From Blastocladiella emersonii ATCC 22665 (lineage: Eukaryota; Fungi; Blastocladiomycota), in NCBI GenBank assembly GCA_025594325.1, contig JANHCV010000006.1, positions 186,001-250,000 of the forward strand: a stretch of DNA of 64,000 bases. Direction: 5' to 3'. Below the pieces are notes generated by a model. The model did no database searches, had not been told where the DNA came from, and was given only the letters and a program-made list of their open reading frames with translations. Below, in pieces: positions 36,743-53,472 of the stretch (the stretch's first letter is position 1; each line of letters begins with the position of its first letter). The translations under genes and the position numbers were made by a program.

Positions 36743-37670
36743 TGTTGTATCCCTTAAGGGATACGACATGGGCTGACCCACTGCCACTCGGGCTGACCAA
36801 TTGCTTACCCCGAGCGGTTGGCAGCAGTCACTCGGGGTAACCACGTGAGACCCAGTTGCTTACCCCAGGTGGTTAATAAAATGTTGGATTCAAATGTCGT
36901 GTTCCCTTAGGGAACACGACATGCGGACGGAGGCCGAAGGCCAAAGCAGGTGGGTGGGAGGGTGGGTGGAAGGGAGGGGGGCGAGTGGTCGAGGAGTGAG
37001 TCCCTGACCTGACCCCCAAGCCAGTCCCTGACCAACCCCTTGGGCTGACCATTGCTTACCCCGAGCGGTCGGCGGCGGCCGGCGAGCGCAGCGAGACGAA
37101 GAGCAGCGCAGCTGCGGCTACCCACTGACAGAGTTCCCTGGTCTGGTCCCTGAGCACGGCTGCGAGTCGATCTGCGAGTTGATCTGTGAGTTGATCTGCG
37201 AGACAAGTCTGAGAGCAGATCCCTGAGCCCGTCCCTGACCAACCACTCAGGCTGACCATTGCTTACCCCGAGCGGTTGGCGGCGGCCGGCGAGCGCAGCG
37301 AGACGAAGAGCAGCGCAGCTGCGGCTACCCACTGACAGAGTTCCCTGGTCTGGTCCCTGAGCACAGCTGCAAGTCGATCTGTGAGCAGTCCCCGAGCCAG
37401 TCCCCAAGCCCGTCCCTGACCACCTGCCGCAAGCGGCTGCTATGAAGCCACTCACCGTAAAGGTCCCAATTTCCCCTATGAAACAGTCAGTGTCTATATA
37501 GAGTACCAGCATTCTATAGGGGAAATTGGGACTTTCAAAGACAAGAGGTCAGGGTACGGGGGTCAGGGCAGGGGAGCGTCTTAGCAGCATCAATGTATTG
37601 GGCAGGACAAGGGTCAGGGTACGGGGTCAGGGTACGGGAGCGTCTTAGCAGGCAGCGTCTTAACAGGCAA
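36743..37670 (+). repeat. Left TIR (~930 bp; inner limit approximate)
   Basis: Reverse complement of ~52545..53472. Contains palindromes at 36743-36768, 36895-36921 and 37463-37532, a ~200-bp internal direct repeat, and repeated TTGCTTACCCC. Confidence 0.92.
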
Positions 37671-37679
37671 GGGAGCGTC

Positions 37680-40674
37680 TTAGAGCTCGTCCAGGTCCAG
37701 CTCGAGGACAAACGGCGCCGACTTGGCTGGAGCAGTGGTCCAGGTCTTGTACAGGGCAAAGTACTTGTGGTTGTCTGTCCACTCAAAGTTAGTGTAGCGC
37801 TTGCCAGCAATCTCAACCTGGGGCTTCTCCTTGTCGCTCTGGGTGATCTTCTTGTTGAAGTAGGTGTTGAGCAGCTGGGATAGCATGGCAGCGTTGCCAC
37901 CACAGCCAGCCCAGACCCGCTTGAAGTACTTGTTGATGCCCTTGTTGAACTTGGCAGGGACAGTTGCATGGATGTCAAACTTTTCAGCTGTGCGAAGGTC
38001 CATGTTGTTGTGCTCCAGGATCTTGTGCAGGACGTGGGCCGCGTCCTTGGTGTAAAAGTGCTTGATCTGCTCCATGAACCCCTTGGCGTTGCTGTCCCAG
38101 ATGAACTCCATGTCGGCCTCGGTCAGGCCCTTGAATGTGTGGACAAAGAAGCTCTTGCGGATTGAGAGGCAGGTGGTCCAGGTTGGCTTGTCAAGGCAGC
38201 CATTCACGTGATTGTCAATGACCTCCTCAGATGGCAGCTTGACGTTTGCCCAGTCAAAGGACCAGCCCAAGTGAATGACCTCCTTGATCTCGGGGTGCAC
38301 CTCGTAGTAGTACTTGGGGCAGTTGTCAATGACAATGTTGGCAATCTTGCGGAACTCGTCAAAGACAAGGTGGCAAGCAGTCACTGCAGCCATCTCGTTC
38401 TCGAGCACCGAGTTCTTGACAATGGCGCTGTGCATGTCGCCAATTGGGAAGGTGTTGATGACCATGGTCCGGTTGATGAACGCGCTGCGACCGTTGGATT
38501 GGGCCATGAACACAATCTCATTGTCGATGGGGTTGCGCACGCAGTAGATTGCTTGGAAGAAGTCGCAGATCGGGAACCAGGACTCATAGCGCGCGTACAC
38601 CTTGTCGAACTTGCGCTTCTCCAAGAAGTTGACACCAACGGGGATCTTGAGGTTGGCAATGACCACGCGGACCGTCTCCTTGCCCCAAACAGTGTCAGGG
38701 TCAACAAGTTCCTTGGACTTGTCAGCAGGACGGTCGCCGTGGTACACCTTGATCTCCTCGCCGATCTTCCAACCCATGACCCGCTCAAGGTGCTCGCCAA
38801 AGGTCTGGCTGGACTGACCAGATGGACTTGGGGTCGATCTTGCGCGGGATGAACAGGTAGAGCTTCTTGCCATCTTGCAGGTCCTGGATGATGTTGCGTT
38901 CCATGACGTCCTCAGCGCGTAGGCTGAGCGCCGGGTCCTTGTTCTTCTTGGTGGCAATGTACGTCATCTTGCGCGGCACGTAGTTCTTGGGGAGCTTGTT
39001 CTTGATCACCTTGATCTTACCACTCATGATGGTCAGGATGTTGTGCTCGACAGTAAAGGAGCAGAGGACGTCCATGGTCAGGTTTGTGATGAACGCGTCC
39101 ATGAAGATGCCCTTGCTGTCCTTGTGCTCGCAAAGCGTCTTGAAGGCAATGAGGTTGGCAACCAAGTTGTTGCCCTTAGAGGTCTTGTGGAGCGTGTCGT
39201 CTTGGAACATTTTGAGGACCGTCTCTGACTCATCCACCACGACAATGTTGTAGGGCTTGGAGATGTAGTGCAGGGAACAGGGCGAGACAATGAGTCGATT
39301 GTTGTCTCCCATGGTCTTCTTGTCAACGTTGCGGTAGTTGACAAATCCGAGGTTGTGTTCGTTGTTGAGCCGACCCTCCGTGTTGTGGGCCAGGGTGATG
39401 CGAGGGGTGATCCAGACCACGCGCGAATTAGGGTACTTGGCAATGTAATCGCAAACAGCGCCCGTCTTGTTGGAGCCCATACCCGCAGCCAGCACGTTGA
39501 ACTTGGCAGTTGTAATGTCGTCACCTGACAGGTACGGTTCCTTGCTGGTCACGTCCACAGGTACCTGGAGCGACTCCTTGAACTGCTTCATGGCCTTGGA
39601 CTTGAACGCGTCCGGGAAGCGGGCAAGAAAGATGCCCTTGATCAAGCTGTCTGGTACCTGGTAGTTGTCGTTGCTGGCAATCTCGTTCCACCGGTCCCAG
39701 TACTTTTGCATGCGCTGAGCCGAGTTGTCCTGCTGCGACGTCCACGCCCAGAACTGGTCAAATGTGACCCCTTTGTGCATGGCCCATGTCATGATCCGCC
39801 AGGTCACGTTGTTGTGGAACGCGTTCTCGGGGCTGATGGGGATGTTGTGGAGGATCTCGAGTGGCGTGGCGTCGTAGTAGAAGAAGTTGGGGTCGATCGT
39901 CACACCCTCAAACTTGGGAATGTCCAGGTTGAAGTCGAGGCGACCCTCGTGGCGCTTGGTCCGCGCTTCCTTGGCCTTGGCAGACACAAACTCTTCAAAG
40001 GACAGGTCCGAGACCGGCACGCAGTTGGGGTCAAAGTCGCACTGGATCAAGTGCTTGGACAGGCGGTCCTTGTTGCCCGAGATCCACACGCCGGGCGTCT
40101 TCTTGGGCTTGGACTGGTTGATGCACTTCATGAAGCGGTGCTTGCTGTACACGCTGGAGTCAAAGCCGAGCTTGACGTGGTCGGGGTGGCTGCAGAACAG
40201 CTTCAGGAACGGCATGTCCTTGAGCGTGACCGTGTAGTTGCTGATGACAATGTGCCACGACTTTTTGAGGTCTGTCTCGTAGCCGCAGACCTGGAGGTTG
40301 GCGCCGGGGAACTGGGTCAGGATGACCTTCTTGATGACGTCCAGGGTCACGTCCTTGCGGTTGCCTGGGCAGTCAATGTCAAAGTAGACCTTGGACAGGC
40401 AATCGGGGTGGACCATCTCCTGGATGCAGCGGTTCTTGTCGAGGAGCCTGGCCAGGTCGGCTGTCTTGACCTTGGCAAAGTAGTGTGCTGCAATGGGCTG
40501 GCCATTTTTGTCAACGCCCTTGTCAACGAGGCGCTTGATGACCGTCTCGTCGTCTTGCAGCTCAGACAAGAGCGTGCGCTGAGGGCCCATGTCACTGTCG
40601 CCACCATCCTTGCCATGGAACCACTTGAGACCAAAGGCGGTGCCATATTTACCGGGAACCTGCTTGCAAGGCAT
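37680..40674 (-). CDS. AEP-type primase fused to SF2 (UL9/origin-binding-like) helicase, split by a frameshift near 38815-38830
   Basis: AEP motifs VYFDID, SWHIVI, DSSVY..R.MKCINQSK. Helicase motifs AGMGSNKT, VVWITPRITL, VVVDESE, FMDA, and IKVYHGD/VVIANLKIPVG in the second frame. The span is 2995 nt; removing 1 nt gives one 997-aa frame. Confidence 0.8.
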
Positions 40675-40854
40675 GTTGTTATGATGAGGTAACAGAAAAG
40701 GTGACAGGACAGGTGCGTTTAAACGCGCAGGATTTAGCGTTAATGACTGTGCCCCGGGAGCCCTTGAAGGCATGGCCCATGACTTGCCACTGTCCTGACC
40801 CAGGCCCAGCTGCCCTTGCGTGACCTGACCCTGACCCAGACACGACCTCCCCCA

Positions 40855-41375
40855 TGAGCCCAACTTGGGAGCCAATCGCGTCTCAGGTCACGATCCTTGA
40901 ACCGTGACCTGGGCAGCAACTGAGGGCAACGTCACGGCCCCCCATGCTCCTGACTTGGGAGCCAGCAGAGGCCGAGGTCACAGCCCGCTCAAACCGTGAC
41001 CTGGGCAGCGACTGAGGGCAAAGTCACCGACCCCCCCCCCCCATGCTCCCGACTTGGGAGCCAATCGCGTCTCAGGTCACGATCCTTGAACCGTGACCTG
41101 GGCAGCGACTGAGGGCAAAGTCACAGACCCCCCAGGAGCCCAACTTGGGAGCCAATCGCGTCTCAGGTCACGATCCTTGAACCGTGACCTGGGCAGCGAC
41201 TGAGGGCAAAGTCACAGACCCCCCAGGAGCCCAACTTGGGAGCCAATCGCGTCTCAGGTCACGATCCTTGAACCGTGACCTGGGCAGCGACTGATGGCAA
41301 ACTCACGGCCCCCCATGCTCCCGACTTGGGAGCCAGCAGAGGCCGAGGTCACAAACCTCTCAAACCGTGACCTGG
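40855..41375. repeat. Tandem array of ~91-bp units (about 5-6 copies), each with an AGGTCACG-N10-CGTGACCT inverted repeat
   Basis: Units start at 41141 and 41232 (CAACTTGGGAGCCAATCGCGTCTCAGGTCACGATCCTTGAACCGTGACCTGGGCAGCGACTGAGGG...). The array lies between divergent genes. Confidence 0.9.
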
Positions 41376-41501
41376 GCCCTCCCACGGTCCATGACTTGCC
41401 ACCATCATGACCCTGACCCAGGCCCAGCTACCCAGAAAAAAGAACGTTGCGTTCAAACGCACTTGAGCCCATGGAGCCTTTTTGTTGACAGTCAGTAAAC
41501 C

Positions 41502-42638
41502 ATGGCGCTTGACTCTCTTGCCTCCCAGGTCGCCATTGCCCTCGCTCAGCACTTTGCCACCGATGTAGTGCACCAAGTGCTCGATGGTATCAAGCCGCTG
41601 CTGGCATCCTTTGACGAGCGGCTCAAGGGAGTTGAGACCAGCCTCGCCGCGCTGGCTGCAGTGTCACGTAACTGCAATCACCGTCCCAATCACACCCCCG
41701 TCGACGAGTCTGGCGAGCCCATGGACACTGACCCCCAGGTCAAGTACGCGCAGATGACCGAGGAATCCATTGCGGCGTGCGTCAACGCACGTGTTCAGAA
41801 CAAGCACGGGGAACTGGTTGAGCTGAGCGACACGGACAAGGCCAAGACATCCCGCGTGCTCTGTGCCTTTGCCAAGCCGGGCATGGACATTGAAGACGTT
41901 GACGCTGTGTCCAAAGCTGTGGCAGCGTACCGTGCGTCCAAGGGCGAGCAGGGGCTGCAGGTTGAGACGCTCAAGGCCCTGGCCAAGTACTGCACCTGGA
42001 ACGGGTGGACCGAACTCGGGGCCAAGTACACAGAGGCCAAGAAGCAGGACGCTGCCGACTTCTGCGACGCGCGCAAGGAACTCGAGTCTGGTGCGCTCCC
42101 AAGCCGTGACGCCATTTGCGCCGCTATTGTTGATGCAAAGGGCTTGGGCACAGGGCTCCTGCGTCTGTACCTCCAAGTTGTGAGTGTGGTGCGCTCCGAC
42201 CCTGCGTTCCTGACCACAAAGCCAACCACTGGGTACCCGTACTACGACCCAGAGACCCAGATTCTGGCCGGCGATGTCATTGTCAAGACAGAGGGCTGTG
42301 GCTACAACTTCTCGCACACAGTTAGTGAGCCCAAGGTCGCCGCCGCTCTCAAGCGTATCCTCGCCCAGCGTCTCGCCGAAGGTCATGACTTTGTCTTCAA
42401 CAACTACACCCTCGAGGAGCTCAAGGACACCACGCTCCGCAAGAGGGTTAGCAGCACCTGGTGTACGTCGATTAGTCGGGCTGCAAAGACGGTCGGCTTT
42501 GAGGATGGCGGCGTGGCAGTGATCCGCCGTATCTCCACCAGCGAGAACTTTGCCGCGCAGCAAGCTATTGCTGACCGCGCACACGAGATGGGTCACAGCG
42601 TCCCTGTTGCCCTGACCTACTACATGACGCCTCAGTAA
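41502..42638 (+). CDS. Tyrosine recombinase (divergent, PLV-type)
   Basis: The C-terminal catalytic pattern VIRRISTSE...ADRAHEMGHSVPVALTYY corresponds to HxxR...LGH...Y. An upstream LLRLY Arg and IVKT Lys are candidate catalytic residues. Confidence 0.7.
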   Translation: MALDSLASQVAIALAQHFATDVVHQVLDGIKPLLASFDERLKGVETSLAALAAVSRNCNHRPNHTPVDESGEPMDTDPQVKYAQMTEESIAACVNARVQNKHGELVELSDTDKAKTSRVLCAFAKPGMDIEDVDAVSKAVAAYRASKGEQGLQVETLKALAKYCTWNGWTELGAKYTEAKKQDAADFCDARKELESGALPSRDAICAAIVDAKGLGTGLLRLYLQVVSVVRSDPAFLTTKPTTGYPYYDPETQILAGDVIVKTEGCGYNFSHTVSEPKVAAALKRILAQRLAEGHDFVFNNYTLEELKDTTLRKRVSSTWCTSISRAAKTVGFEDGGVAVIRRISTSENFAAQQAIADRAHEMGHSVPVALTYYMTPQ

Positions 42639-42666: not shown

Positions 42667-43779
42667 ATGTATGCCCACAAAGAGCCGCTCACAGACGCAC
42701 AGCAAGCATTCCTGACAGACTTGTACTACAAGCATGGCCACGTAGGTGTTGGCATCCGTCGGCTCTTTGACATTGTGTCCAGAGAGAACACAGGGAAGCA
42801 CATCTACCACGCCCAGCTTGAGAGATGGCTCGGCAAACAGTCTGTGTGGCAGCAGTACAAACGCGCACCTCAGAAGCGCCGAGACATTCGAAGCATCAAC
42901 TCAACAAGTCCTGGCCGCAACTTTCAGCTCGACCTCATTGACATGGGCGAAAATGGTACGTACAAGGGCTTCTGTTACATTCTCACGTGTGTCGACCTGG
43001 CGAGCCGCCGCGTCTACCTCCAACCCATCAAGACCAAGGACAAGACGCGGGAAGCATGGTCCAGCGTGGTCGCCAAGCACAGCCTTGCACCTGCCACGAT
43101 CCAGACGGACAATGGGACCGAGTTCTTTGGCATAGAGGCCGGGACTGAGGCCAAGCACATCAAGGGCAAGGCAGGAGTGCCATACGGTCAAGGTGTTGTT
43201 GAGCGTATGAACGGGACCATCTGCCGGATGCTCACACCGTGGCTGTCCATCCCGGGCAACAACGACTGGCCCAAGCACCTCGAGACCATTGAATCTGTGA
43301 TCAACAGCAGCAAGTCGAGGGCCACGGGCAGGGCGCCCAACGAGTTCCATGACATGCCCCGCGAAACGGCCAAGCAAGAGCTCAAGGAGATCCGAGCTGC
43401 CAAGGGCAAGCCCGAGGGCGACCCTCTGAGCGCGTTGTTGAAGGTAGGGACCCAGGTCCGAGTCCGCGAGCCGTACAAGACTGCCATGGAGGCCAAGGGG
43501 AAGCTGGTCTGGTTGACAACTGTGAGCCAGGTCCAGGTTGTGCGCAAGGGGTTGGGTGTGAGCAATCCGAGCTACAAGGTCCAAGGCCTCAAGGGCTTCT
43601 ACCCTCGAAGCGACGTCCAGCCAGTCACAGTGACCCAGGACCCGCCGACAAGGCCACGCATGGCCCCAAGTCTTCCAAGGCTCCCTGTTGCGCGCACCCC
43701 GGTCACGCCAAGGGAGCCCTCGACCCGGGTCAGGCGCGTCCTAGTCCGAGTCCAAGAAAAGTGGGACCGCGGGCTTTAG
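42667..43779 (+). CDS. Retroviral-like (rve/DDE) integrase of Polinton type
   Basis: Catalytic triad in FQLDLIDM, IQTDNGTEF and GVVERMNGTI. Polinton-like N-terminus LTDLYY..G...LF and C-terminal KVGTQVRV...W....V.....NP.YKV. Confidence 0.92.
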   Translation: MYAHKEPLTDAQQAFLTDLYYKHGHVGVGIRRLFDIVSRENTGKHIYHAQLERWLGKQSVWQQYKRAPQKRRDIRSINSTSPGRNFQLDLIDMGENGTYKGFCYILTCVDLASRRVYLQPIKTKDKTREAWSSVVAKHSLAPATIQTDNGTEFFGIEAGTEAKHIKGKAGVPYGQGVVERMNGTICRMLTPWLSIPGNNDWPKHLETIESVINSSKSRATGRAPNEFHDMPRETAKQELKEIRAAKGKPEGDPLSALLKVGTQVRVREPYKTAMEAKGKLVWLTTVSQVQVVRKGLGVSNPSYKVQGLKGFYPRSDVQPVTVTQDPPTRPRMAPSLPRLPVARTPVTPREPSTRVRRVLVRVQEKWDRGL

Positions 43780-45719
43780 AGCAGGGTCCAGTGGCTTTGA
43801 ATGATGACCTGGCAGTCGTTGGCAATTGCGACCAACGGGATCCAGATGAAAGAGTAGCTCTTGGCCGCGTCAAGGTACTCAATGCTCGAGAACTGAAGGA
43901 ACTGGACGTTGCCTTCAGCGCGGCACCCGGTGACAAGCGACACTGCAATCATGTCCGTCATATTGTACAGCGCAAAGTTCACAGTGTGGGCTCCAGGGAG
44001 CGCGCCGTTTGCGTAGTAGCCCTTTGCATGGACGAGGTAGTAGCCACTGACAGGGGGTTTGACGCATCCATTGATCACAGACGTGAACGCGCCTGCCATG
44101 GACTGGAACGCAAAGGTGGCTGGGCCCGTCGATGCTGTGCCGCCAATGATCTTGCCGCCCGTGGTCACTCCGTTTGTAGAGTGGTGCTTGGCCTGAGCGA
44201 CGTACCGGGTCGTGCCAGACTGCAAGTCAACGTACGCCTTGTTTGCCGCGTTGGTGCCTGCCACTGGAGCGAGGTCAAGGGTGAGCTGCCCTGTGAAGCG
44301 ACCAGTGCCATTGACACGGAGCTTTTCTGTGCCAAGCGTCGCCAAGCCCACGACCACATTGCCGCCACCTGCCACGAGGGAGACCCTGCCTGTGGTTGCA
44401 GACGCAATCTCAATGTTACCCGCCGCTGTGCATGCCAGGTTGCTTCGCAGTACGCCTGCCTGCTTAAAGTCAACGTACGTCAATGTATTGGCACCCAAGT
44501 CAAAGACAAGGTTCGCGCTTGTGGCATTCTGGACCAGGACGTTGGGTACAGTCAGTTGCTTGCCAACTCCAAGACCACCAGCAATGGTGACTGCTCCAGT
44601 GCTTGATGTCAAACTGTCCGTTGTATTCGCAAAGGCAAAGGCAGCGCCAAGCCCAAGGGTGGACTGGGGGAGCGTGCCAGTGACTGAGGCTGCGCTCACG
44701 GCCGTGACCTTGGCCGAGACGTCGGGGAGTCGTGCCAGGTCAATGGTCCCTGCGAGCTTGGCCGAGTCAATGCCAGATGCCAGCTTGGCGTTGGTCAGGG
44801 TCCTGTCGGCGATGCGGGCAGGGTCAAGGATCCCAGTGAGCTTGACCGCCAACACGTCCGCAACCTTGGCGTCCGTGACTGCGCCTGCTGCCAGGTGGGC
44901 TGTTCCAATGGACCCGACGTTGAGCTTGCCCCCATCAATGCCAGTTGCCAGCTTGGCGTTGGTCACGGCCGCGTCTGCCAGGACCAGGGAGCCGACCGTG
45001 CCCGCTGCCAGCTTGGACCCGTCGATGCCAGCTGCCACCTTGGCGTTGGATACGGCACCGTCTGCCAGGGCTCCTGTCCCAATAGTCCCTGCAACGAGCT
45101 TGGACCCAGACACGGACGCGACCTTGGCATCTGTGACTGCCAGGTCAATGAGAGCCGCCGTGCCAACTGTGCCTGCCACAAGCTTGGACCCAGACACGGA
45201 CGCGACCTTGGCATCAGTCACTGAGCCGTCTGCCAGGACCGAGGTCCCAACTGTGCCTGCCACGAGCTTGGACCCGGACACGGACGCAACCTTGGCATCT
45301 GTCACTGAGCCGTCTGCCAGGACCGAGGTTCCGACGGCTGGGAGGTTGGACGCACTGAGCACGCCCACGAGCTTGGACGCAGACACAGTGTCCAGCTGAG
45401 CATCGACGAGCTTGCCTGTGACCTGCCCTGCTGTAATCGTGGCGACCTTGTCAGCCGTGACGCTGGCCGGGAGCAGCTGTGCTGTGCCAACTGACTTGAC
45501 ATAGAGCCCTGCTGCGCCCACGCCAAGGGTCTGGTTGTTGACCTTGGCCGAGACAGTGGTCCCTGAGACTGCCACGCCAGGGCCAGCAACAGGTGCGCCG
45601 ACCGTGGCGTACACGGCACTGATGGCCGCGTCAACGTAGGCCTTGGACACGTCCGGGACCCCCGTGGTAGACACGGTCAGAGACGCAGTACTTGAGACGT
45701 TAAAGATATTCTTGACCAT
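43776..45719 (-). CDS. Virion fibre/spike-like protein with 28-aa shaft repeats and a C1q-like head
   Basis: Repeats LADGSVTDAKVASVSGSKLVAGTVGTSV (84-bp DNA repeats at ~45080-45330). The C-terminus NGCVKPPVSGYYLVHAK...LYN...IEYLDA resembles the C1q fold pattern. Probable ATG at 45719. Confidence 0.65.
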   Translation of the reverse strand: MVKNIFNVSSTASLTVSTTGVPDVSKAYVDAAISAVYATVGAPVAGPGVAVSGTTVSAKVNNQTLGVGAAGLYVKSVGTAQLLPASVTADKVATITAGQVTGKLVDAQLDTVSASKLVGVLSASNLPAVGTSVLADGSVTDAKVASVSGSKLVAGTVGTSVLADGSVTDAKVASVSGSKLVAGTVGTAALIDLAVTDAKVASVSGSKLVAGTIGTGALADGAVSNAKVAAGIDGSKLAAGTVGSLVLADAAVTNAKLATGIDGGKLNVGSIGTAHLAAGAVTDAKVADVLAVKLTGILDPARIADRTLTNAKLASGIDSAKLAGTIDLARLPDVSAKVTAVSAASVTGTLPQSTLGLGAAFAFANTTDSLTSSTGAVTIAGGLGVGKQLTVPNVLVQNATSANLVFDLGANTLTYVDFKQAGVLRSNLACTAAGNIEIASATTGRVSLVAGGGNVVVGLATLGTEKLRVNGTGRFTGQLTLDLAPVAGTNAANKAYVDLQSGTTRYVAQAKHHSTNGVTTGGKIIGGTASTGPATFAFQSMAGAFTSVINGCVKPPVSGYYLVHAKGYYANGALPGAHTVNFALYNMTDMIAVSLVTGCRAEGNVQFLQFSSIEYLDAAKSYSFIWIPLVAIANDCQVIIQSHWTLL

Positions 45720-45739
45720 GTTTAACCTTAAGCAACAGA

Positions 45740-46031: not shown

Positions 46032-47819
46032 ATGGTGCAAGATGCACGGGGAAAAAGGTACCGACATGGGGACGTTTTATTTTCGGTCCATACAGTAACC
46101 ATCATGGGCCGAAGAACAGTACCAGATCTACTTGCAAGAGTGACCAAGGCAACCGGCGGGCGCATCACGGCCGAGCGCCTTGCAGGGCAGAAGATCAAGG
46201 CGACCATTGACGGCCGCGAGTACACGTTCCCCAATGCCAAAGAGCTCCTTGACGTCTGGGTGCCTTACATCCTTGCCTTTGACTACAAGGTGACGCCCGA
46301 GAGCTATGCCAACAACTTTGGCCGCAAACAAGGCGACTCGCTGTTCTACCTCAAGCACCAGGACGGCGTCACTGGGTACGAGGTCAAGGACCTCCAGGAG
46401 CACGTCCAAGATACGCTTAAAGCGTGGGAAGAGCACCAGGCAACGGGCAAGGTCACTCGAGTCCCAGTTGCTCCACCAGCGGCAAGCCCCAGACCAGAGG
46501 CCCCCGAGTTGGCCACGGACAGCAACAGGGGCAGCAGCGAAGAGGAACGCAACGAGCTGGCAGAAGAGATCTCACAAGCCCTGGACGTCATTGACAAGGA
46601 CGCTGTACCGGACCACTTGCTCCCCGTGCCCATCCGGCCAGTCATGCCTGAGCAGTACCCGGTTGAGGCCGGCGACTATGTTGGTCAAGACATTGACGAG
46701 TACGGCGCCATGATCCCTGGCCAGTACCTGATCCAGAATGACAATGACGGCGGCAACGACCCGCCCCCAAGGCTTGACGACAGCACCCGCGACCTCGTGG
46801 TCATGCCACCAAGCTACAGCCCGGACGTGGCACAGTGGCAAGGCGTGTACAACGAGGGTCACGTCCACCCGGCCATGGACGAGGCACGCATGATTGAGGG
46901 CTCCAAGGACTTGCAGGTCTACAACCCCAAGCGGGCGCTGACAACCACGGACGACATGGAGGTCGACGTTGTCCAGAACTTTCAACAGTTTAACCAGTTC
47001 GTGTACAACAGCTACACGCAGCAGGACACGCAGAACGTCGACATGCGGCAGTTCATCACCCAGTATGAGAACAACTACTACGAGCAGAACGTGGACATGC
47101 GACAGCAGATCCTGGTCCAGTACAACAATGACCCAAACGTCATGGCCGCGCTTGAGCTCATTGCCTCGCAGTTTGCCGGGTCCCAGGTCATGCAGTACCA
47201 GGCGTACCAGGCGCTCATCGAGCAGTCGGCGGCCGCTCAGGGACTGGCCATGGACGCATTTGCCAACCTCGCGTCCGGGATTGTGGACACCCTCCGAGCC
47301 GAACGCAACGACTTTGTCCGCCAGATTGACGCTGGCAACTGCGCGCTTGTGTCTGAGATTGCCACGGGCATGTCCTCTGCGCTCAGCAACCAGCAGGTGC
47401 TCATGAACCAGCTCGCAAGCGGCGTCCAGGGCGCGATCCAAGGGCAGACCCAGAGCAACAAGGCCATGACCAAGACGCTCCAAGACCTTGGGTCCAAGCT
47501 GGACACGATCCCTGCACCCCAAGTCATTGTCCAGCCTGCCGACACAAGCGGCCTCGAGGCCATGATCAGGGAGCTGGCCGCGCAAAACAATTCTGGCAGT
47601 AGTTCTAAGAAGACCGACATGCTCCTCGAACAGATCCTCAAGCAACTGGGCTACAAGAAGCCGACTGACGCGAAGCTGTTCACAGACAAGCGGGCAGCGG
47701 GTAGCGGGCTGACAGCGCCCAAGATCCAGCGTCACCAGAAGATCCCTGAGCGGCCCGTCAAGCAGGTCCGCAAGACCCCAAGGCGCAGCGGCATTGTGCT
47801 TGACCTCAGCTGGGACTGA
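46032..47819 (+). CDS. 595-aa hypothetical viral protein (Q/N-rich middle region)
   Basis: Long ORF with viral codon style at the head of the ATPase-MCP-mCP block. It contains a repeat QNVDMRQ x2. Confidence 0.8.
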   Translation: MVQDARGKRYRHGDVLFSVHTVTIMGRRTVPDLLARVTKATGGRITAERLAGQKIKATIDGREYTFPNAKELLDVWVPYILAFDYKVTPESYANNFGRKQGDSLFYLKHQDGVTGYEVKDLQEHVQDTLKAWEEHQATGKVTRVPVAPPAASPRPEAPELATDSNRGSSEEERNELAEEISQALDVIDKDAVPDHLLPVPIRPVMPEQYPVEAGDYVGQDIDEYGAMIPGQYLIQNDNDGGNDPPPRLDDSTRDLVVMPPSYSPDVAQWQGVYNEGHVHPAMDEARMIEGSKDLQVYNPKRALTTTDDMEVDVVQNFQQFNQFVYNSYTQQDTQNVDMRQFITQYENNYYEQNVDMRQQILVQYNNDPNVMAALELIASQFAGSQVMQYQAYQALIEQSAAAQGLAMDAFANLASGIVDTLRAERNDFVRQIDAGNCALVSEIATGMSSALSNQQVLMNQLASGVQGAIQGQTQSNKAMTKTLQDLGSKLDTIPAPQVIVQPADTSGLEAMIRELAAQNNSGSSSKKTDMLLEQILKQLGYKKPTDAKLFTDKRAAGSGLTAPKIQRHQKIPERPVKQVRKTPRRSGIVLDLSWD

Positions 47820-47845: not shown

Positions 47846-48643
47846 ATGTACGACATTGTTGCCATTGACAACGGCTTTACGCGCAACGACGACGGCGAGC
47901 CGCTGCCAATCCCCAAGCACCCGTTCACCATGAACGTCATTGGCGCCAAGGGTCAGGGCAAGTCGACGCTGATCGCAAACATGGTCTGCTTCCCGCACTT
48001 TTACAAGGGCCAGTTCGACAACATCTGGGTCTTTAACCCAACGTTCCACGCCGACGACAAGTACGAGTACATTGCCAGTCAACCAATCCTGCAACCGCCC
48101 AAGAAGGAGCGCAACGTGCTGGACCCCCAGGAGCGCGACCCGGACCGGCTCAAGATCAAGCCAGGGTGCATTGTCACGGACCCCGAGCAGTTCATCCCGA
48201 CCCTGCTCAAGATGCGCCAGGACCTGACCAAGACATTCAAAGAGTCTGGCAAGAAGGCGCTCCAGGACCAGCTGCTGATCATCGACGACGTGCTCGGGCT
48301 CAAGCTGCTGAGCCACAGAACGCTGACCAACTTTCTGTGCAACTCGCGGCACTTGAAGATCAGCTGCATCATTGGCGTCCAGCGGTGGTGTGCCCTGCCC
48401 AAGACTCTGCGCATCAATTGCAGCTACAGCGTCGTCTACCCAATCTATGACAAGACCGAGGTCCAGACGCTGCACAAGGAGATTGGGTCGCAGTTCGACC
48501 TCAAGGAGTTTGAGGCCATCATTGAACAGCTCTTTGACACGCGTACTGGCAACACGAAGCGACGCTTCCTGGGCGTCAACAACCAGAACCCGCCCAAGTA
48601 CCGGCTTGTAGACAGCTTCAGCGAGTGGATTGTGAAGCAGTAG
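47846..48643 (+). CDS. A32-like FtsK/HerA genome-packaging ATPase
   Basis: Walker A GAKGQGKST, Walker B LLIIDDV, and A32 motif NSRHLKISCIIGVQ. Confidence 0.92.
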   Translation: MYDIVAIDNGFTRNDDGEPLPIPKHPFTMNVIGAKGQGKSTLIANMVCFPHFYKGQFDNIWVFNPTFHADDKYEYIASQPILQPPKKERNVLDPQERDPDRLKIKPGCIVTDPEQFIPTLLKMRQDLTKTFKESGKKALQDQLLIIDDVLGLKLLSHRTLTNFLCNSRHLKISCIIGVQRWCALPKTLRINCSYSVVYPIYDKTEVQTLHKEIGSQFDLKEFEAIIEQLFDTRTGNTKRRFLGVNNQNPPKYRLVDSFSEWIVKQ

Positions 48644-48683: not shown

Positions 48684-49904
48684 ATGTCCAGTACCAACGC
48701 CCAGTTCTCGCAGGTCCTGTCCAAGACTCTCCCTCCCGAGATGTTGTTCAACCTGCCCAAGGAGTCCGTCTATGCCAAGCGCCAGACCGTCCAGTTCACG
48801 GCTCAGGGCGGCCCCAAGTTTGCTCCTGGCAACAGCATCAGCGTCCTGCTCCCGCCGCGCGACAACATGATGGACACGCACTGTACTTTCCTGCAGTTCT
48901 CGGCCAAGACCACGGACGCCAACGTCGCTTTCTGCGATGGTATCTTCAGCGTCATTGACCGTGTCTGCATCTACAGCGCGTCTGGTGCCCTACTCAAAGA
49001 GCTCCCGTACTACAACCTGCGTCAGCGCATCGAGGCCAACGTGACGGTCCCCCAGTACCTCAAGGACTCGTGTCTTGGTGTGGCACAGGGCTACTTTGCG
49101 TCCGGCGCTGACAAGTTCGCCGTCTCGTCCGGGCTGCACCGGTACATGCTGCCCATCAAATCCGCCCTGCTGGCAAACCAGAAGCACCTCCCAATGAAGT
49201 ACACAGGCGGCATCCGCGTCGAGTTCACCCTTGCACCTGGCAGCGACGCCTGCGTGGTCAAGAACAATGCAATCCCGGGCTACACAGTCAAGGACGTCTG
49301 CATTGTCTCGGACCTGATCAAGCTCAACGACCAGCAGATCGCGGTCATGGACGCGGCCTTCAAGAAGCAGGGCCTCAAGCTCTTTGGCACGACCTACAAC
49401 CACCACTTCCTGAACTACTCGGTGCCCAACTCGACGCTCAACATCTCGGACCGCTCGGCCTCACAGAAAGACATCCTGCTGTCGTTCCGCGACAATGCCG
49501 TGCTCAATGACAATGCCAAGGACTCGTTCCTTCGTGCCAAGACCATTACATCGTACCAGTTCAGCGTGGCCGGCCGACTCTTCCCTCAGCGACCCATCCG
49601 CTGTGACGACTACGCGTCCGAGGCGTTTGTTGAGCTGACCAATGCCTTCCATGGCCACATCATTGGCGCTGGCCTCACAGTTGACAAGTTCAACGCGCCG
49701 GCCAAGGGTACCTTTGTTGTCGGCCGTGACCTTGAGTCAAGTTGCACCGTGGTCAGCGGCGACAAGTCTTGCAAGAGCCAGGCTGTGGACATGCAGGTGA
49801 TCCTGACTTCAAGCGTGGCCCCAAACCAGCGCGTGGACGCCTTCATTGGCATCAACGTGGTCTACGAGTTCCTGCCAACCAGCGAGATCAACATCTACAA
49901 GTAA
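48684..49904 (+). CDS. Major capsid protein (double jelly-roll, PLV-type), 406 aa
   Basis: Size, position after the ATPase, and PLV-MCP-like pattern F.PG..I...LP....MD....LQF / SVIDRV.I....G.LL.EL.YYN / LPIKSALL..QKHLP...GGIRVEFTLA / YQFSVAG..FP..PI. Confidence 0.82.
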   Translation: MSSTNAQFSQVLSKTLPPEMLFNLPKESVYAKRQTVQFTAQGGPKFAPGNSISVLLPPRDNMMDTHCTFLQFSAKTTDANVAFCDGIFSVIDRVCIYSASGALLKELPYYNLRQRIEANVTVPQYLKDSCLGVAQGYFASGADKFAVSSGLHRYMLPIKSALLANQKHLPMKYTGGIRVEFTLAPGSDACVVKNNAIPGYTVKDVCIVSDLIKLNDQQIAVMDAAFKKQGLKLFGTTYNHHFLNYSVPNSTLNISDRSASQKDILLSFRDNAVLNDNAKDSFLRAKTITSYQFSVAGRLFPQRPIRCDDYASEAFVELTNAFHGHIIGAGLTVDKFNAPAKGTFVVGRDLESSCTVVSGDKSCKSQAVDMQVILTSSVAPNQRVDAFIGINVVYEFLPTSEINIYK

Positions 49905-49946: not shown

Positions 49947-50213
49947 ATGATCTTCCGTAACCTCTGGACCAACTTTAGCAATGTGCTCGGCCAGGTCGGG
50001 TCCTTTGTCAACAAACACATGCTGACCGTCCTCAAAGGCGTCAAGACTGTGTCCAAGTTCTTTGAGCAGTCGCACAACCCCGCTGTGAGCTCCATTGCGC
50101 AGATGGTGACCAAGGGCGCCAACCTTGCCCAAGACATTCACACCTGGTACAACCGACCAACAAGCGAGATCTTTGAGGCAGACGCTGACAACACGGGGAC
50201 AGCTGTACAATAA
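49947..50213 (+). CDS. 88-aa hypothetical protein with N-terminal amphipathic helix
   Basis: ORF between MCP and mCP, preceded by the element's upstream motif. Its N-terminus is FRNLWTNFSNVLGQVGSFV. Confidence 0.6.
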   Translation: MIFRNLWTNFSNVLGQVGSFVNKHMLTVLKGVKTVSKFFEQSHNPAVSSIAQMVTKGANLAQDIHTWYNRPTSEIFEADADNTGTAVQ

Positions 50214-50231: not shown

Positions 50232-50975
50232 ATGTCCGAGTACAAGACGCTGACCATCTGCAGCCACAACCTCAAGAACGGCATCCTGTACCTGCCACGA
50301 CCCCTGTCTGTGCGCAGCGTCAAGGTCAACTCGGCGTACCTCTGCAACAGCTGGCACGCGGTCAACTCCAAGGCCAACAAAGTGTACCTGACCCAGAGCC
50401 ATGGCGCGTTGACGTTCCCGGGTACCATCACCGTCCCTGACGGCAACTACACAGTTGAGACGTTCACGGCCACGCTCAAGAGCCTGCTCAACAACGCGCC
50501 CTCAGCGTACCTCTGGCAGGGCACATGGGACGTCCAGGTTGACTTGACTACCCAGAAGATGCGCCTGGCCAACGACACGGTCGACTTTACAATTGGAACA
50601 GGGACAGCGTCGCTGAACGTCCACATGGGCTTTGTTGGAGCGTATGGCTACAGCAAGGTCCAGTACGCGTCGGCGCTGGTCAACATCTCGCCCATCAACC
50701 TGCTTCACGTCTACTCGCGCAACCTTGGCACCCGGCTTGTGGACAACATGTACAGCGCGTACCCACAAGGCAACGGCGTACTTTGTAGCATCCACGTCAC
50801 GCAACCCTTTGGCAGCTGGTTTGAGCATCAACCACACATGGGCGACTACTTTCGCTTTGACGCGCAGGGACAGGCCCAGCAGATTGACTGTATTGACATT
50901 GACGTGGTAGACGAGAACCTGCGCTCTGTCGACTTTCTCGGCCAACCCTTCTACGTCGAGCTCGCGTTCATCTGA
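50232..50975 (+). CDS. Minor capsid (penton) protein, single jelly-roll
   Basis: Polinton/PLV mCP pattern: N.W..VNS..N.VY, VPDGNYT...F...LKSLLN, and C-terminal IDCIDIDVVDENLRSVDF.G..F.VEL.F. Confidence 0.8.
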   Translation: MSEYKTLTICSHNLKNGILYLPRPLSVRSVKVNSAYLCNSWHAVNSKANKVYLTQSHGALTFPGTITVPDGNYTVETFTATLKSLLNNAPSAYLWQGTWDVQVDLTTQKMRLANDTVDFTIGTGTASLNVHMGFVGAYGYSKVQYASALVNISPINLLHVYSRNLGTRLVDNMYSAYPQGNGVLCSIHVTQPFGSWFEHQPHMGDYFRFDAQGQAQQIDCIDIDVVDENLRSVDFLGQPFYVELAFI

Positions 50976-51006
50976 CATTGACTTTAATTGTTGTCGTACT
51001 GTAAAC

Positions 51007-51108
51007 ATGATCCTCGAGACGCTCCTTGTTGCAACCAACGCCCTGATCCTCGTAGCCAACCTGGCCATTGTTGGGTACACAAGCAAAGTATTCCACGCCA
51101 TAGAGTAA
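51007..51108 (+). CDS. 33-aa hydrophobic micro-ORF (MILETLLVATNALILVANLAIVGYTSKVFHAIE)
   Basis: Hand-translated. It is preceded by TTGTTG..TAAACATG like other viral genes and has one TM-like stretch. Confidence 0.45.
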   Translation: MILETLLVATNALILVANLAIVGYTSKVFHAIE

Positions 51109-51753
51109 GCAACGACATGTGCTTTAAATTCTTTCTGCAAAGGCATAGTAAGACACAGGACAATGAATACTGGCTCTACTGCATCAACGCCCTGCGCACC
51201 TTCCACGAGCATCCCTTGGACTGGCTGTCTGGGCCCCCAGTCAACAGCCAACTACACGGCCATCTGCGACGTGGCCCTGCCAGGTGCCAAGGTTGTGTAC
51301 ACTGTCTGCTTTGAATAGATCCTTCAAGTTAACTTGGTTAGCTACCTTGAAGCCTTTACTGGTCGCTCTCAGACTACCCGGCGGTATGTGTACTTGTGCC
51401 CACAGCACGGGTACATGACTTGGACCCACAGCAGCTCATTGTCATGGACCCAGCTGGGAGCATCATAGTGATCGCATGGCGGCTTGGGCAGGGGGACGAT
51501 CTCTTTGATACAGCCTCGCATAGTTACAGTAGTCCAACAAAGTTTATAAATTGACAAACGCATTCAACGCACTTGGCATGACGTAGCAACGGGACACACT
51601 ACGACATTGACATAAAGTAGAAATAAGGGGTGCTCCGCCCTGTCCAGGAAGCGTTGGCCAAGCGCCTCCCAGACTGCTCCATCCTGGAGGTCTCCTTTCA
51701 TGGTGGCCAGCCACTAATCAGAGTTCCAACACGGAGCAGGCATCATCGCTAAT

Positions 51754-51860
51754 ACTCATTGAACCACACAGCGCCAACACACCCAAAAGACTCATCAAAC
51801 CACACAGCGCCAACACACCCAAAAGACTCATCGAACCACACAGCGCCAACACACCCAAAA
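51754..51860. repeat. 36-bp tandem repeat x3 (AACCACACAGCGCCAACACACCCAAAAGACTCATC..)
   Basis: Directly visible. Confidence 0.9.
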
Positions 51861-52239
51861 AGAGAGAGATAGGAATGGATCAAAGAGCACTGCATGGGTA
51901 GCTAATCCAAGCAGCGCCCACAATCCAGACCAAGACAGGGGATAACCAAGTCATTGCCGTGTACATACAGATGACTCAGCAGATCCCAAGCCAAAGGAAT
52001 AGGGAAGTGGCCACCCGCAATGTCGGCCATGCACCCATACCAGAAGCCTACTGTGAGCGTTGGGCGCATTGCAAAGATGGCCTATACAATCGGAGTAGGG
52101 CTTGAGGCAGTGAATCTGTGACATGGCTTTCATGGTGAGTGGCAAAGAGCAGCTCTCAGGGCAGGGGGAGTGGGGGGTTCTTATAGGGCCAGGGTTAGCG
52201 CTAAATCCTCAGGCACGGGGCCCTGATCTGGCACCCCCA

Positions 52240-52535
52240 ACGTGGCCCCCTGCCTGACCCCCTGCCTGACCCCCCGCCTGACCCCCCGCCTGACCCCCCA
52301 CGTGACCCCCCGCGTGACCCCAGACCTGGCACCCCAGACCCTCCATGACCCGGCACCCCCGACCTGGCACCCCAGACCTGGCACCCTGACCTGGCACCCC
52401 AGACCCTCCATGACCCGGCACCCCAGACCTGGCACCCCAGACACTCCATGACCTGGCACCCCAGACCTGGCACCCCCAACCCTCCATGACCCGGCACCCC
52501 AGACCTGGCACCCCAGACACTCCATGACCTGCCAC
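52240..52535. repeat. C-rich subterminal tandem repeats (CCTGACCCCCC; GACCTGGCACCCCA; CTCCATGACC)
   Basis: Directly visible just inside the right TIR. Confidence 0.85.
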
Positions 52536-52544
52536 GCTGCCTTC

Positions 52545-53472
52545 CTGCCTGCTAAGACGCTGCCTGCTAAGACGCTCCCCTGCCTTGACCTTGTACCTTG
52601 ACCCCTGTCCTGCCCAATACATTGATGCTGCTAAGACGCTCCCCTGCCCTGACCCCTGTACCCTGACCTCTTGTCTTTGAAAGTCCCAATTTCCCCTATA
52701 GAATGCTGGTACTCTATATAGACACTGACTGTTTCATAGGGGAAATTGGGACCTTTACGGTGAGTGGCTTCATAGCAGCCGCTTGCGGCAGGTGGTCAGG
52801 GACGGGCTCGGGGACTGGCTCGGGGACTGCTCACAGATCGACTTGCAGCTGTGCTCAGGGACCAGACCAGGGAACTCTGTCAGTGGGTAGCCGCAGCTGC
52901 GCTGCTCTTCGTCTCGCTGCGCTCGCCGGCCGCCGCCAACCGCTCGGGGTAAGCAATGGTCAGCCTGAGTGGTTGGTCAGGGACGGGCTCAGGGATCTGC
53001 TCTCAGACTTGTCTCGCAGATCAACTCACAGATCAACTCGCAGATCGACTTGCAGCTGTGCTCAGGGACCAGACCAGGGAACTCTGTCAGTGGGTAGCCG
53101 CAGCTGCGCTGCTCTTCGTCTCGCTGCGCTCACCAGCCGCCGCCGACCGCTCGGGGTAAGCAATGGTCAGCCCAAGGGGTTGGTCAGGGACTGGCTTGGG
53201 GGTCAGGTCAGGGACTCACTCCTCGACCACTCGCCCCCCTCCCTTCCACCCACCCTCCCACCCACCTGCTTTGGCCTTCGGCCTCCGTCTGCATGTCGTG
53301 TTCCCTAAGGGAACACGACATTTGAATCCAACATTTTATTAACCACCTGGGGTAAGCAACTGGGTCTCACGTGGTTACCCCGAGTGACTGCTGCCAACCG
53401 CTCGGGGTAAGCAATTGGTCAGCCCGAGTGGCAGTGGGTCAGCCCATGTTGTATCCCTTAAGGGATACGACA
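52545..53472 (-). repeat. Right TIR (~930 bp)
   Basis: Reverse complement of the left TIR with scattered transitions. Confidence 0.92.

What the first reader, a model, noticed from the sequence alone, without database searches (positions are those of the whole stretch)
36743..53472. Near-intact endogenous Polinton-like virus in a fungus-like genome
The element is complete from TIR to TIR with a TSD. It carries the full morphogenesis set (MCP, penton, A32 ATPase, fibre), a primase-helicase and two integrating enzymes, but no pPolB or adenain protease was recognised. That distinguishes it from canonical Mavericks/Polintons and from virophages. PLVs are well known from algae and other protists; to my knowledge they are far less documented in fungi. 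If the host is fungal, this may be an undescribed lineage, possibly still inducible or dependent on a giant virus (inference).
Basis: partly seen in the sequence, partly recalled or inferred. Interest (0 to 1): 0.95.

Follow-up and report, generated by a model that had tools for sequence, protein, structure and literature searches.

The report
Integrated Polinton-like virus in Blastocladiella
A 16.7-kb small DNA virus of the Polinton-like kind lies integrated, almost undamaged, in the genome of the water mould Blastocladiella emersonii, one of about twenty copies; such viruses were already glimpsed in related zoosporic fungi, so it is a well-preserved new member rather than a new kind.

Summary
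Window 36743-53472 is a 16,730-bp element. It has 927-nt terminal inverted repeats (98% identical), 5'-TG...CA-3' ends and a 5-bp target-site duplication (CTAAC). The window itself holds an empty copy of the same site at 947-951.

The 406-aa product of 48684-49904 folds confidently (pLDDT 91.6) as a double jelly-roll capsid protein. Next to it are a Pox_A32 packaging ATPase, a penton-sized conserved protein, a repeat-rich fibre and an rve integrase. There is also a roughly 1000-aa replication protein: an AEP-primase-like N-terminus joined to a herpes-UL9-like SF2 helicase. In this copy that gene carries one frameshift.

No protein-primed polymerase or adenain protease is present. A second integrating enzyme could not be confirmed.

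The host is a true fungus, Blastocladiella emersonii ATCC 22665. It carries at least 18 annotated capsid genes on nine contigs. Copies differ with dN/dS of about 0.1-0.4. Almost every gene is preceded by the motif TTGTTG-N8-TAA.

The same gene order occurs in Allomyces macrogynus, where Polinton-like virus genes were reported in 2021.

Verdict: a real Polinton-like virus and a new member of a known kind. Whether it is active or depends on a giant virus is untested.

The parts
947..951 (.). Empty-site paralogue: a single CTAAC inside the duplicated flank (window 1-3732)
   Evidence: Window 1-951 = 35792-36742 (100%) and 945-3732 = 53471-56258 (99.86%).
36738..36742 (.). Left copy of the 5-bp target-site duplication CTAAC
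36743..37669 (+). Left terminal inverted repeat. It starts 5'-TG, has an 18-nt palindrome GTATCCCTTAAGGGATAC at 36747-36764, and holds internal 207-bp direct repeats.
37680..40674 (-). Replication protein gene, about 1000 aa: an AEP-primase-like N-terminus (conserved DxD, sxH and D motifs) plus a UL9-like SF2 helicase. Broken in this copy by one frameshift; no in-frame stops.
   Evidence: Pfam Herpes_ori_bp 1e-15. Family profile against PDB: herpesvirus origin-binding protein, 2.4e-25. Conserved motifs. Aligns in two frames with 100% coverage at 97% identity to the 996-aa B. emersonii protein P0185.
40849..41377 (.). Intergenic array of 91-bp tandem repeats (45-nt sub-repeats holding GTGAC...GTCAC), between the divergent replication gene and ORF378. 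Candidate origin or regulatory region (inference).
   Evidence: Copy number varies between copies.
41502..42638 (+). ORF378, function unproven. Tyrosine-recombinase-like motifs seen by eye only.
   Evidence: Homologues only in Blastocladiella, plus a weak one in the Allomyces locus. No family or structure hit. dN/dS 0.17-0.38.
42667..43779 (+). rve (retroviral-type DDE) integrase, intact
   Evidence: Pfam rve 6e-7; IS481-type 4e-18; PFV and HTLV integrase cores in PDB.
43776..45719 (-). Fibre protein with about eight 28-aa (84-bp) repeats. The likely start is the first ATG, which is preceded by the promoter-like motif.
   Evidence: Phage_Tail_Tip 3e-8; tail-fibre PHROGs; repeats; start.
45740..45991 (+). 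Small ORF (83 aa), conserved in all copies. 37% identical in metagenomic relative L002.
46032..47819 (+). Large protein of unknown function (595 aa mechanical ORF; 571 aa as annotated in other copies). It occupies the slot upstream of the ATPase, as in related PLV contigs.
   Evidence: No detectable homology to the proteins in the same slot of L002 and L003.
47846..48643 (+). A32-type (FtsK-HerA) genome-packaging ATPase, intact
   Evidence: Pfam Pox_A32 1e-12; PHROG terminase 1e-8.
48684..49904 (+). Major capsid protein with a double jelly-roll fold, intact
   Evidence: AlphaFold2 pLDDT 91.6, pTM 0.88. Foldseek: PBCV-1 Vp54 2.6e-17 with TM 0.70; BFVD best hit 1.5e-22 with TM 0.74. 503 homologues.
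49947..50213 (+). Small ORF (88 aa) between the MCP and the penton-like gene. Conserved; 44% identical in L002.
50232..50975 (+). Penton-like minor capsid protein (247 aa), assigned by position and conservation
   Evidence: Conserved directly downstream of the MCP in L002 (37%), L003 (35%) and Allomyces L010 (27%, E 4e-35). No PDB sequence hit. Fold not tested.
51007..51108 (+). 33-aa hydrophobic ORF directly preceded by the motif
51369..51521 (-). 50-aa Cys-rich ORF directly preceded by the motif on the minus strand
51560..52545 (.). Non-coding variable region with 36-bp and C-rich 12-76-bp tandem repeats. Similarity between copies ends near its left edge.
52546..53472 (-). Right terminal inverted repeat, ending CA-3'
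53473..53477 (.). Right copy of the target-site duplication CTAAC

Best explanation
This is an endogenous Polinton-like virus (PLV) of the zoosporic fungus Blastocladiella emersonii.

Shown:
- It is a discrete 16,730-bp insertion with 927-nt TIRs, TG...CA ends and a 5-bp duplication of CTAAC, which occurs once at an empty paralogous site.
- It carries a morphogenetic block: a protein of unknown function, an A32 ATPase, a double jelly-roll MCP, a small ORF and a penton-like protein, plus a fibre.
- It carries an rve integrase.
- It carries a replication protein that joins an AEP-primase-like domain to a UL9-like SF2 helicase.
- It has no DNA polymerase, RNA polymerase or maturation protease.
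- It belongs to a family of at least 18 copies whose differences are mostly synonymous.
- A 17-nt motif, TTGTTG-N8-TAA, sits 2-6 nt upstream of nearly every start codon and almost nowhere else in the window.

Inferred mechanism:
- The linear genome is integrated by its rve integrase acting on the CA-3' ends, giving the 5-bp staggered cut.
- When expressed, the genes are read from the shared motif.
- The primase-helicase opens an origin, perhaps the 91-bp repeat array next to it, and recruits a polymerase it does not encode. That polymerase comes from the host nucleus or from a co-infecting giant virus.
- The ATPase packs the genome into an icosahedral capsid of MCP trimers and penton pentamers.
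- The fibre binds wall-less zoospores.

This particular copy has one frameshift in the replication gene, so on its own it may be replication-defective. The alternative is that the frameshift is a sequencing error.
For: - Boundaries: TIR, TSD and empty site.
- MCP fold.
- ATPase, integrase, helicase and fibre families.
- Primase motifs and relatives. These include Allomyces proteins that UniRef names 'Primase C-terminal 2 domain' and 'Replication origin-binding'.
- Host and copy number.
- Full or partial copies at other loci: L001, L004, L005 and L009.
- dN/dS of 0.09-0.42 for all larger genes.
- Motif: 6 of 6 exact matches lie inside the element, against 0.53 expected. Nine of 10 relaxed matches lie inside it. 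The motif is conserved at the same places in the other copies.
- Synteny: same order in metagenomic contigs L002 and L003 and in a TIR-bounded Allomyces macrogynus element, L010.
- Literature: fungal PLVs in Spizellomyces and Allomyces (PMC7805220).
Against: - The penton assignment and the role of ORF378 were not tested by structure.
- There is no expression, particle or read-level evidence.
- One frameshift in the replication gene, 1.8% divergence between the TIR arms, and CpG depletion (o/e 0.75 against 1.26 in the flanks) fit a silenced, ageing provirus as well as a live one.
- No phylogeny against named PLV reference clades could be run.
- The identity of the best BFVD matches is not given by the tool.
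Confidence: 0.9

Rival explanations
1. It is a dead molecular fossil: an old provirus family that now only decays or spreads passively in the genome.
For: - One frameshift in this copy's replication gene.
- One in-frame stop each in the replication gene of L004 and in the integrase of L005.
- The TIR arms differ at 17 of 927 sites. Sixteen are transitions and 11 lie in CpG context. The element is CpG-depleted relative to its flanks.
Against: - Eleven of 12 genes in this copy are intact, as are nearly all genes in four other copies.
- dN/dS between copies is 0.1-0.4, not about 1.
- The TIRs of L004 and L005 are 100% identical.
- The flanks of the filled and empty sites differ by only 0.1%.
Confidence: 0.3
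2. It is a virophage-like PLV that multiplies only in cells co-infected by a giant virus (Mycodnaviridae), using that virus's transcription and replication machinery.
For: - It encodes no DNA or RNA polymerase.
- A private promoter-like motif precedes nearly every gene and is almost absent from host sequence.
- Giant viruses persistently infect Blastocladiomycota such as Allomyces (PMC13533422).
- Several PLVs depend on giant viruses (preprint 10.64898/2026.06.19.733378).
Against: - No Nucleocytoviricota gene lies in the window.
- The Mycodnaviridae paper does not mention Blastocladiella.
- The motif could not be compared with any giant-virus promoter.
Confidence: 0.15
3. It is a canonical Polinton/Maverick self-synthesising transposon.
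For: rve integrase, TIRs, a short TSD and the capsid module.
Against: - No pPolB or adenain protease appears in any ORF, and there is no room for one in the gene map.
- The replication gene is a primase-helicase.
- The TSD is 5 bp, not 6.
Confidence: 0.03
4. It is a fragment of an endogenous giant virus, or an assembly chimera.
For: - The MCP fold is closest to chlorovirus, iridovirus and other Nucleocytoviricota capsids.
- Odd duplications surround some copies: the direct flank duplication in the window and a 5.5-kb inverted duplication around L004.
Against: - It is a discrete 16.7-kb unit with a TSD and an empty site.
- The same unit occurs at many loci.
- It has no other giant-virus hallmark genes.
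- The MCP does not reach Pfam's NCLDV capsid models.
Confidence: 0.02

Closest known systems
Integrated PLV genes of Allomyces macrogynus (Bellas and Sommaruga 2021, PMC7805220), here locus L010 on GG745331.1
   Same: - Same host phylum (Blastocladiomycota).
- Same order: TIR, replication gene on the minus strand, ORF378-like gene, rve, A32, MCP, penton-like, TIR.
- MCP, ATPase, penton-like protein and integrase are homologous (27-40% identity).
   Different: - The Allomyces element has a D5-like SF3 (DUF5906) replication protein, as does Blastocladiella copy L005, rather than the AEP plus UL9-like protein of the window copy.
- No fibre homologue was detected there.
- Its MCP and integrase each align in two frames.
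Spizellomyces punctatus group of PLVs (PMC7805220)
   Same: An integrated PLV in a zoosporic fungus with TIRs and a 5-7-bp TSD. Elements of this kind carry an rve integrase or a tyrosine recombinase.
   Different: - It comes from a different fungal phylum.
- About half of that group carry a chitinase, and none was found here.
- The relationship of the capsid proteins was not tested.
Algal PLVs (TsV/TVS group, PgVV/Gezel group; class Aquintoviricetes in the 2026 preprint)
   Same: A small linear dsDNA genome with TIRs, a double jelly-roll MCP plus A32 ATPase plus penton module, a primase-helicase type replication gene instead of pPolB, no protease, and integration into host genomes.
   Different: - The host is a fungus.
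- The helicase is of the herpes-UL9-like SF2 type.
- The element has a lineage-specific promoter-like motif.
- No named member of these groups came back as a sequence hit.
Polintons/Mavericks
   Same: rve integrase, long TIRs, a short TSD and the capsid module.
   Different: It lacks pPolB and the adenain-like protease. Its TSD is 5 bp rather than 6 bp.
Endogenous virophages such as mavirus in Cafeteria
   Same: A multi-copy integrated small dsDNA virus with an rve integrase and long TIRs, and possibly a provirus lifestyle.
   Different: - It has no protease and no pPolB.
- Virophage capsids are only distant fold matches (rank 35).
- Dependence on a giant virus is unknown.

Membership tests
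Polinton-like viruses (PLV) | Double jelly-roll major capsid protein | tested here: met
   AF2 pLDDT 91.6 with two eight-stranded beta-sandwiches. Foldseek to PBCV-1 Vp54, iridovirus and other DJR capsids at 1e-15 to 1e-22.
Polinton-like viruses (PLV) | A32/FtsK-HerA packaging ATPase next to the MCP | tested here: met
   Pox_A32 at 1e-12; the gene ends 40 nt before the MCP start.
Polinton-like viruses (PLV) | Penton (single jelly-roll minor capsid protein) | tested here: inconclusive
   A conserved 247-aa protein lies downstream of the MCP in all relatives. It has no sequence hit in PDB or Pfam.
Polinton-like viruses (PLV) | No protein-primed family B polymerase; replication gene of another type | tested here: met
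   No pPolB in any ORF. The replication protein is AEP-like plus a UL9-like helicase.
Polinton-like viruses (PLV) | Genome of about 10-40 kb with terminal inverted repeats | tested here: met
   16,730 bp with a 927-nt TIR.
Polinton-like viruses (PLV) | MCP/ATPase phylogeny within recognised PLV clades | not tested
   No named reference set was available. Indirect support comes from the closest relatives, which are metagenomic contigs with PLV gene order, and from the Allomyces element.
Polintons/Mavericks | Protein-primed DNA polymerase B | tested here: not met
   There is no unassigned coding space above 1 kb.
Polintons/Mavericks | Adenain-like cysteine protease | tested here: not met
Polintons/Mavericks | rve integrase with TIRs and a 6-bp TSD | tested here: inconclusive
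   Integrase and TIRs are present. The TSD is 5 bp by the empty site. Coincident bases allow readings of up to 7 bp, but these break the TIR symmetry.
Virophages (Lavidaviridae/Maveriviricetes) | Virophage-type MCP plus cysteine protease | tested here: not met
   No protease. A virophage capsid appears only at rank 35 of the BFVD matches.
Virophages (Lavidaviridae/Maveriviricetes) | Replication dependent on a giant virus | not testable with these tools
   This needs biological data.
Endogenous Nucleocytoviricota (Mycodnaviridae) | Several giant-virus hallmark genes (PolB, RNA polymerase, VLTF3, etc.) on a large viral region | tested here: not met
   Only A32- and MCP-type genes are present, in a 16.7-kb unit. 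None occur elsewhere in the window.
Tyrosine recombinases (for ORF378) | Match to the catalytic-domain profile, with the R-K-H-R-H/W-Y residues | tested here: inconclusive
   No Pfam, NCBIfam, PHROG, PDB or phage hit even at permissive thresholds. Motifs resembling RxxD, KT, RR and GH...Y are conserved in the family alignment, read by eye only.

The most novel reading that the evidence does not exclude
Blastocladiella emersonii, a classic laboratory fungus, carries a still-functional PLV family. The family has its own transcription signal, interchangeable replication modules, and a virophage-like relationship to the recently described giant viruses of zoosporic fungi. This would give the first tractable three-way fungus, giant virus and PLV system.
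Probability: 0.12. Interest if true: 0.85.

Novelty: new member of a known kind. Interest (0 to 1): 0.5.

Why it matters
DNA viruses of fungi are very few, and PLVs in fungi are known from only brief mentions (Spizellomyces, Allomyces, and ATPase hits in chytrids). This copy and its relatives give a complete, precisely bounded fungal PLV genome in a model organism.

The evidence includes the integration signature, an empty site, many intact paralogues under purifying selection, two alternative replication modules and a candidate promoter.

With Mycodnaviridae now described in the same fungal phylum, it becomes possible to ask whether PLVs of fungi interact with giant viruses. Existing data can address this: transcriptomes, methylomes and other genomes.

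It also suggests that the 'giant-virus D5 helicase' reported earlier in Allomyces macrogynus may belong to a PLV.

Tried and rejected
- The first AlphaFold run, on seven near-identical Blastocladiella capsid sequences, failed (pLDDT 36.5). It succeeded only with 87 diverse homologues from the exhaustive search.
- Sequence searches of the MCP and its profile against PDB, Pfam and PHROGs gave nothing.
- The tyrosine-recombinase idea for ORF378 found no support from Pfam, NCBIfam, PHROGs, PDB (single sequence and profile) or tblastn against phages.
- The penton profile against PDB gave nothing.
- ORF595 against the proteins in the same slot of L002 and L003 by hhalign showed no homology.
A scan with the single protein found no relative.
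- Exact look-ups of the window's MCP and of a flanking ORF found no record.
- Rfam and tRNA scans of the element found nothing credible.
- The flanking 717-aa ORF also has 84-bp repeats, but it is a coiled-coil host protein unrelated to the fibre.
- Metagenomic relatives L002 and L003 have no terminal repeats, so they are not shown to be complete genomes.

Full report
**1. The observation**

The arms are 36743-37669 and 52546-53472: 927 nt, 98% complementary. The element starts TGTTGTATCCC... and ends ...GGGATACGACA, so its ends are 5'-TG...CA-3'. An 18-nt palindrome lies 4 nt inside each end. CTAAC flanks both sides.

The window also contains its own control. Positions 1-951 are 100% identical to 35792-36742. 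Positions 945-3732 are 99.86% identical to 53471-56258. At 947-951 this paralogue has a single CTAAC and no element.

The two offsets differ by 16,735, which is 16,730 plus 5. So the element is a true insertion with a 5-bp target-site duplication. The last two bases of the TIR happen to repeat the flank. Readings of 6 or 7 bp are therefore formally possible, but they break the symmetry of the ends.

The insertion lies in a 383-bp spacer between two coiled-coil host genes.

**2. Host**

All close homologues of the capsid, ORF378 and replication proteins are hypothetical proteins of Blastocladiella emersonii ATCC 22665. This species is a true fungus of the phylum Blastocladiomycota.

One annotated protein, H9P43_005395, is identical to the window's ORF378 at all 284 of its residues, apart from a gene-model gap. 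The window is therefore most probably part of that strain's 2.02-Mb contig.

**3. Gene content**

The genes, in order along the element:

- **Replication gene (37680-40674, minus strand).** Its family profile matches the herpesvirus origin-binding protein (UL9, an SF2 helicase) in PDB at 2.4e-25. Pfam Herpes_ori_bp matches at 1e-15.
  - The N-terminal 400 residues have relatives in Allomyces arbusculus, A. javanicus, A. macrogynus and the chytrid Phlyctochytrium arcticum, and in metagenomes.
  - Near-invariant DxD, sxH and D...Y...K...QSK columns, followed by Walker A and B, fit an archaeo-eukaryotic primase domain.
  - One relative matches PriCT_2, another matches D5_N, and UniRef names an Allomyces member 'Primase C-terminal 2 domain'.
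  - The primase call is therefore an inference from motifs. The helicase call is shown.
  - In this copy the gene aligns to the 996-aa B. emersonii protein P0185 at 97% identity and 100% coverage, but in two frames and with no stops. That is one frameshift. The copy in L004 reads through that stretch in one frame, so a shared intron is unlikely.
- **91-bp tandem repeat array**.
- **ORF378.** See section 5.
- **rve integrase.** Pfam 6e-7, IS481-type 4e-18, and retroviral integrase cores in PDB.
- **Fibre.** It has 28-aa repeats.
- **83-aa ORF.**
- **A large protein of unknown function.**
- **Pox_A32 ATPase.** 1e-12.
- **Capsid protein.** See section 4.
- **88-aa ORF.**
- **247-aa penton-like protein.**
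- **Two very small ORFs found through the motif.** One is 33 aa and hydrophobic, the other is 50 aa and Cys-rich.
- **About 1 kb of repeat-rich non-coding DNA** before the right TIR.

No ORF matches a protein-primed polymerase or an adenain protease, and no unassigned coding space remains for one.

**4. Capsid protein**

The protein has no hit in Pfam, PHROGs or PDB by sequence. The exhaustive profile search found 503 homologues, 93 of them below 1e-10.

With 87 of these as the alignment, AlphaFold2 gave pLDDT 91.6 and pTM 0.88, with two consecutive eight-stranded sandwiches. Foldseek matched PBCV-1 Vp54 (2.6e-17, TM 0.70). It also matched iridovirus, EhV, faustovirus and vaccinia D13 capsids. 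The best BFVD match was 1.5e-22 at TM 0.74.

**5. What could not be confirmed**

ORF378 is conserved and under constraint (dN/dS 0.17-0.38). Its C-terminus shows motifs that look like those of a tyrosine recombinase. No profile, structure-sequence or phage search supports this. Only one integrating enzyme is established.

The penton assignment rests on a conserved protein of the right size directly downstream of the MCP. This holds in every relative, including Allomyces (E 4e-35).

**6. The family**

The ATCC 22665 annotation holds at least 18 capsid genes on nine contigs. They are 77-97% identical to the window's.

I fetched four other copies:

- **L004/L006** is full length, with 100% identical TIRs.
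- **L001 and L009** are partial views.
- **L005** has the same morphogenetic half but a different replication gene. That gene encodes a 780-aa D5-like SF3 helicase with a DUF5906 domain (2e-18). Its own TIRs are 1-kb long or more and 100% identical.

The left part of L004 is only 84% identical to the window's, while the right part is 95-97% identical. Replication modules are thus exchanged within one capsid lineage.

Counting breaks:

- **Window copy:** one gene broken (replication gene, one frameshift) and eleven intact.
- **L004:** replication gene with one in-frame stop.
- **L005:** integrase with one stop.
- **L001 and L009:** none in the parts seen.

Pairwise dN/dS between copies is 0.09-0.42 for every gene longer than 100 codons. 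Most divergence therefore arose while the proteins were in use, not after integration.

**7. A private transcription signal**

TTGTTG-N8-TAA occurs six times in the 64-kb window, all inside the element, against 0.53 expected; none of 100 shuffles reached six. Each match ends 2-6 nt before a start codon. Five are on the plus strand and one is on the minus strand.

The relaxed form YTGTTR-N8-TAA adds the fibre and replication genes, giving 9 of 10 matches inside the element. The sites are conserved in all Blastocladiella copies and absent from the metagenomic, Allomyces arbusculus and Phlyctochytrium loci fetched by then (L002, L003, L007, L008).

That this motif is a promoter is inference.

**8. 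Relatives elsewhere**

The closest capsids outside Blastocladiella lie on metagenomic contigs with the same order: unknown protein, A32, MCP, small ORF, penton-like protein. These contigs also carry an rve integrase.

The capsid hit P0020 is Allomyces macrogynus AMAG_17996. Its locus, L010, is a TIR-bounded element of at least 13.8 kb. It carries a D5-like replication gene, an ORF378-like gene, rve, A32, MCP and a penton-like gene in the same order.

Bellas and Sommaruga 2021 had already noted MCP, ATPase and helicase genes in A. macrogynus and an integrated PLV in Spizellomyces punctatus. A 2026 preprint mentions A32 ATPases in many chytrid genomes. No paper in the library pairs Blastocladiella with Polintons or capsid proteins.

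**9. Age and state**

The TIR arms differ at 17 sites. Sixteen are transitions and eleven lie in CpG context. CpG observed/expected is 0.75 in the element and 1.26 in the rest of the window.

The flanks of the filled and empty sites differ at only 4 of 3739 positions. This is significantly fewer than the differences between the TIR arms (p = 3e-9).

There are three possible explanations, and I cannot decide between them:

- The arms were already unequal at integration.
- The element mutates faster, for example through cytosine methylation.
- The duplicated flanks are being homogenised.

**10. Verdict**

This is a genuine, precisely bounded, nearly intact Polinton-like virus provirus in a true fungus. 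It belongs to a multi-copy family that was recently under selection.

It is not a Polinton/Maverick, because it has no pPolB or protease. It is not a virophage by gene content. It is not a piece of a giant virus.

It is a new member of a kind already recorded in zoosporic fungi. It is the best-preserved example I could find, and it sits in a laboratory model organism. Activity and dependence on a giant virus are untested.

My first checkpoint note lists the two mechanical ORFs of the split replication gene by their coordinates, which brackets the break. In this report the gene is given as one part.

Noticed in passing
window 1-3732 versus 35792-36742 plus 53471-56258: A segment of at least 3.7 kb, holding the insertion site and the 717-aa coiled-coil gene, is present twice in the window, 35.8 kb apart. 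The copies are 99.9-100% identical; one is empty and one carries the element. The left end of the duplication runs off the window. It could be a recent segmental duplication or two haplotypes assembled in series.
   Followed up: partly
L004 plus L006 (B. emersonii JANHCV010000011.1, record 978991-1008209): The full-length copy there sits inside a 5,481-nt inverted duplication (99.96% identical) that includes about 4.6 kb of host flank on both sides. This is either a real palindrome or a fold-back assembly artefact at the identical TIRs.
   Followed up: partly
L005:7048-9390 (minus strand) and L010:946-3258 (minus strand): Some Blastocladiella copies and the Allomyces macrogynus element carry a D5-like SF3 helicase (DUF5906) in place of the AEP plus UL9-like replication protein. 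This is a module swap within one capsid lineage. The D5 primase-helicase of A. macrogynus, once read as a trace of giant-virus infection (PMC5294986), may be this PLV gene.
   Followed up: partly
window 36743-53472 versus the rest of the window: CpG observed/expected is 0.75 in the element (0.65 in the TIR) against 1.26 in host sequence. GC content is 58% against 64%. Sixteen of the 17 differences between the TIR arms are transitions, and 11 lie at CpG sites. This fits methylation-driven decay or a viral composition signature.
   Followed up: partly
window 45719-45740: The fibre gene (minus strand) and the 83-aa ORF (plus strand) start 20 nt apart. Their motif copies overlap as reverse complements, giving a compact bidirectional arrangement.
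   Followed up: yes
B. emersonii annotation (P0001, P0159-P0177, P0176, P0180, P0187): Automatic gene models in the public annotation join the small ORF to the penton-like gene (303-aa products). They sometimes join the MCP to the penton (622-631 aa) and insert introns into ORF378 and the replication gene. The integrase is not called at all in the three copies examined. The annotation therefore hides the element.
   Followed up: partly
window 4175-5962 and 12156-13938; 21324-24260: Another dispersed repeat pair (81% identical) and an ORF with an endonuclease/exonuclease/phosphatase domain (possibly a non-LTR retroelement) lie upstream of the element. Neither is related to it.
   Followed up: no
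L008 (Phlyctochytrium arcticum JAHLKI010000045.1, 1-16303): A chytrid contig starts with a fibre-like gene, a D12 methyltransferase and a homologue of the AEP plus UL9-like replication protein (31% identity). An rve integrase and a weak A32 match lie nearby. This is probably another fungal PLV-like element.
   Followed up: no
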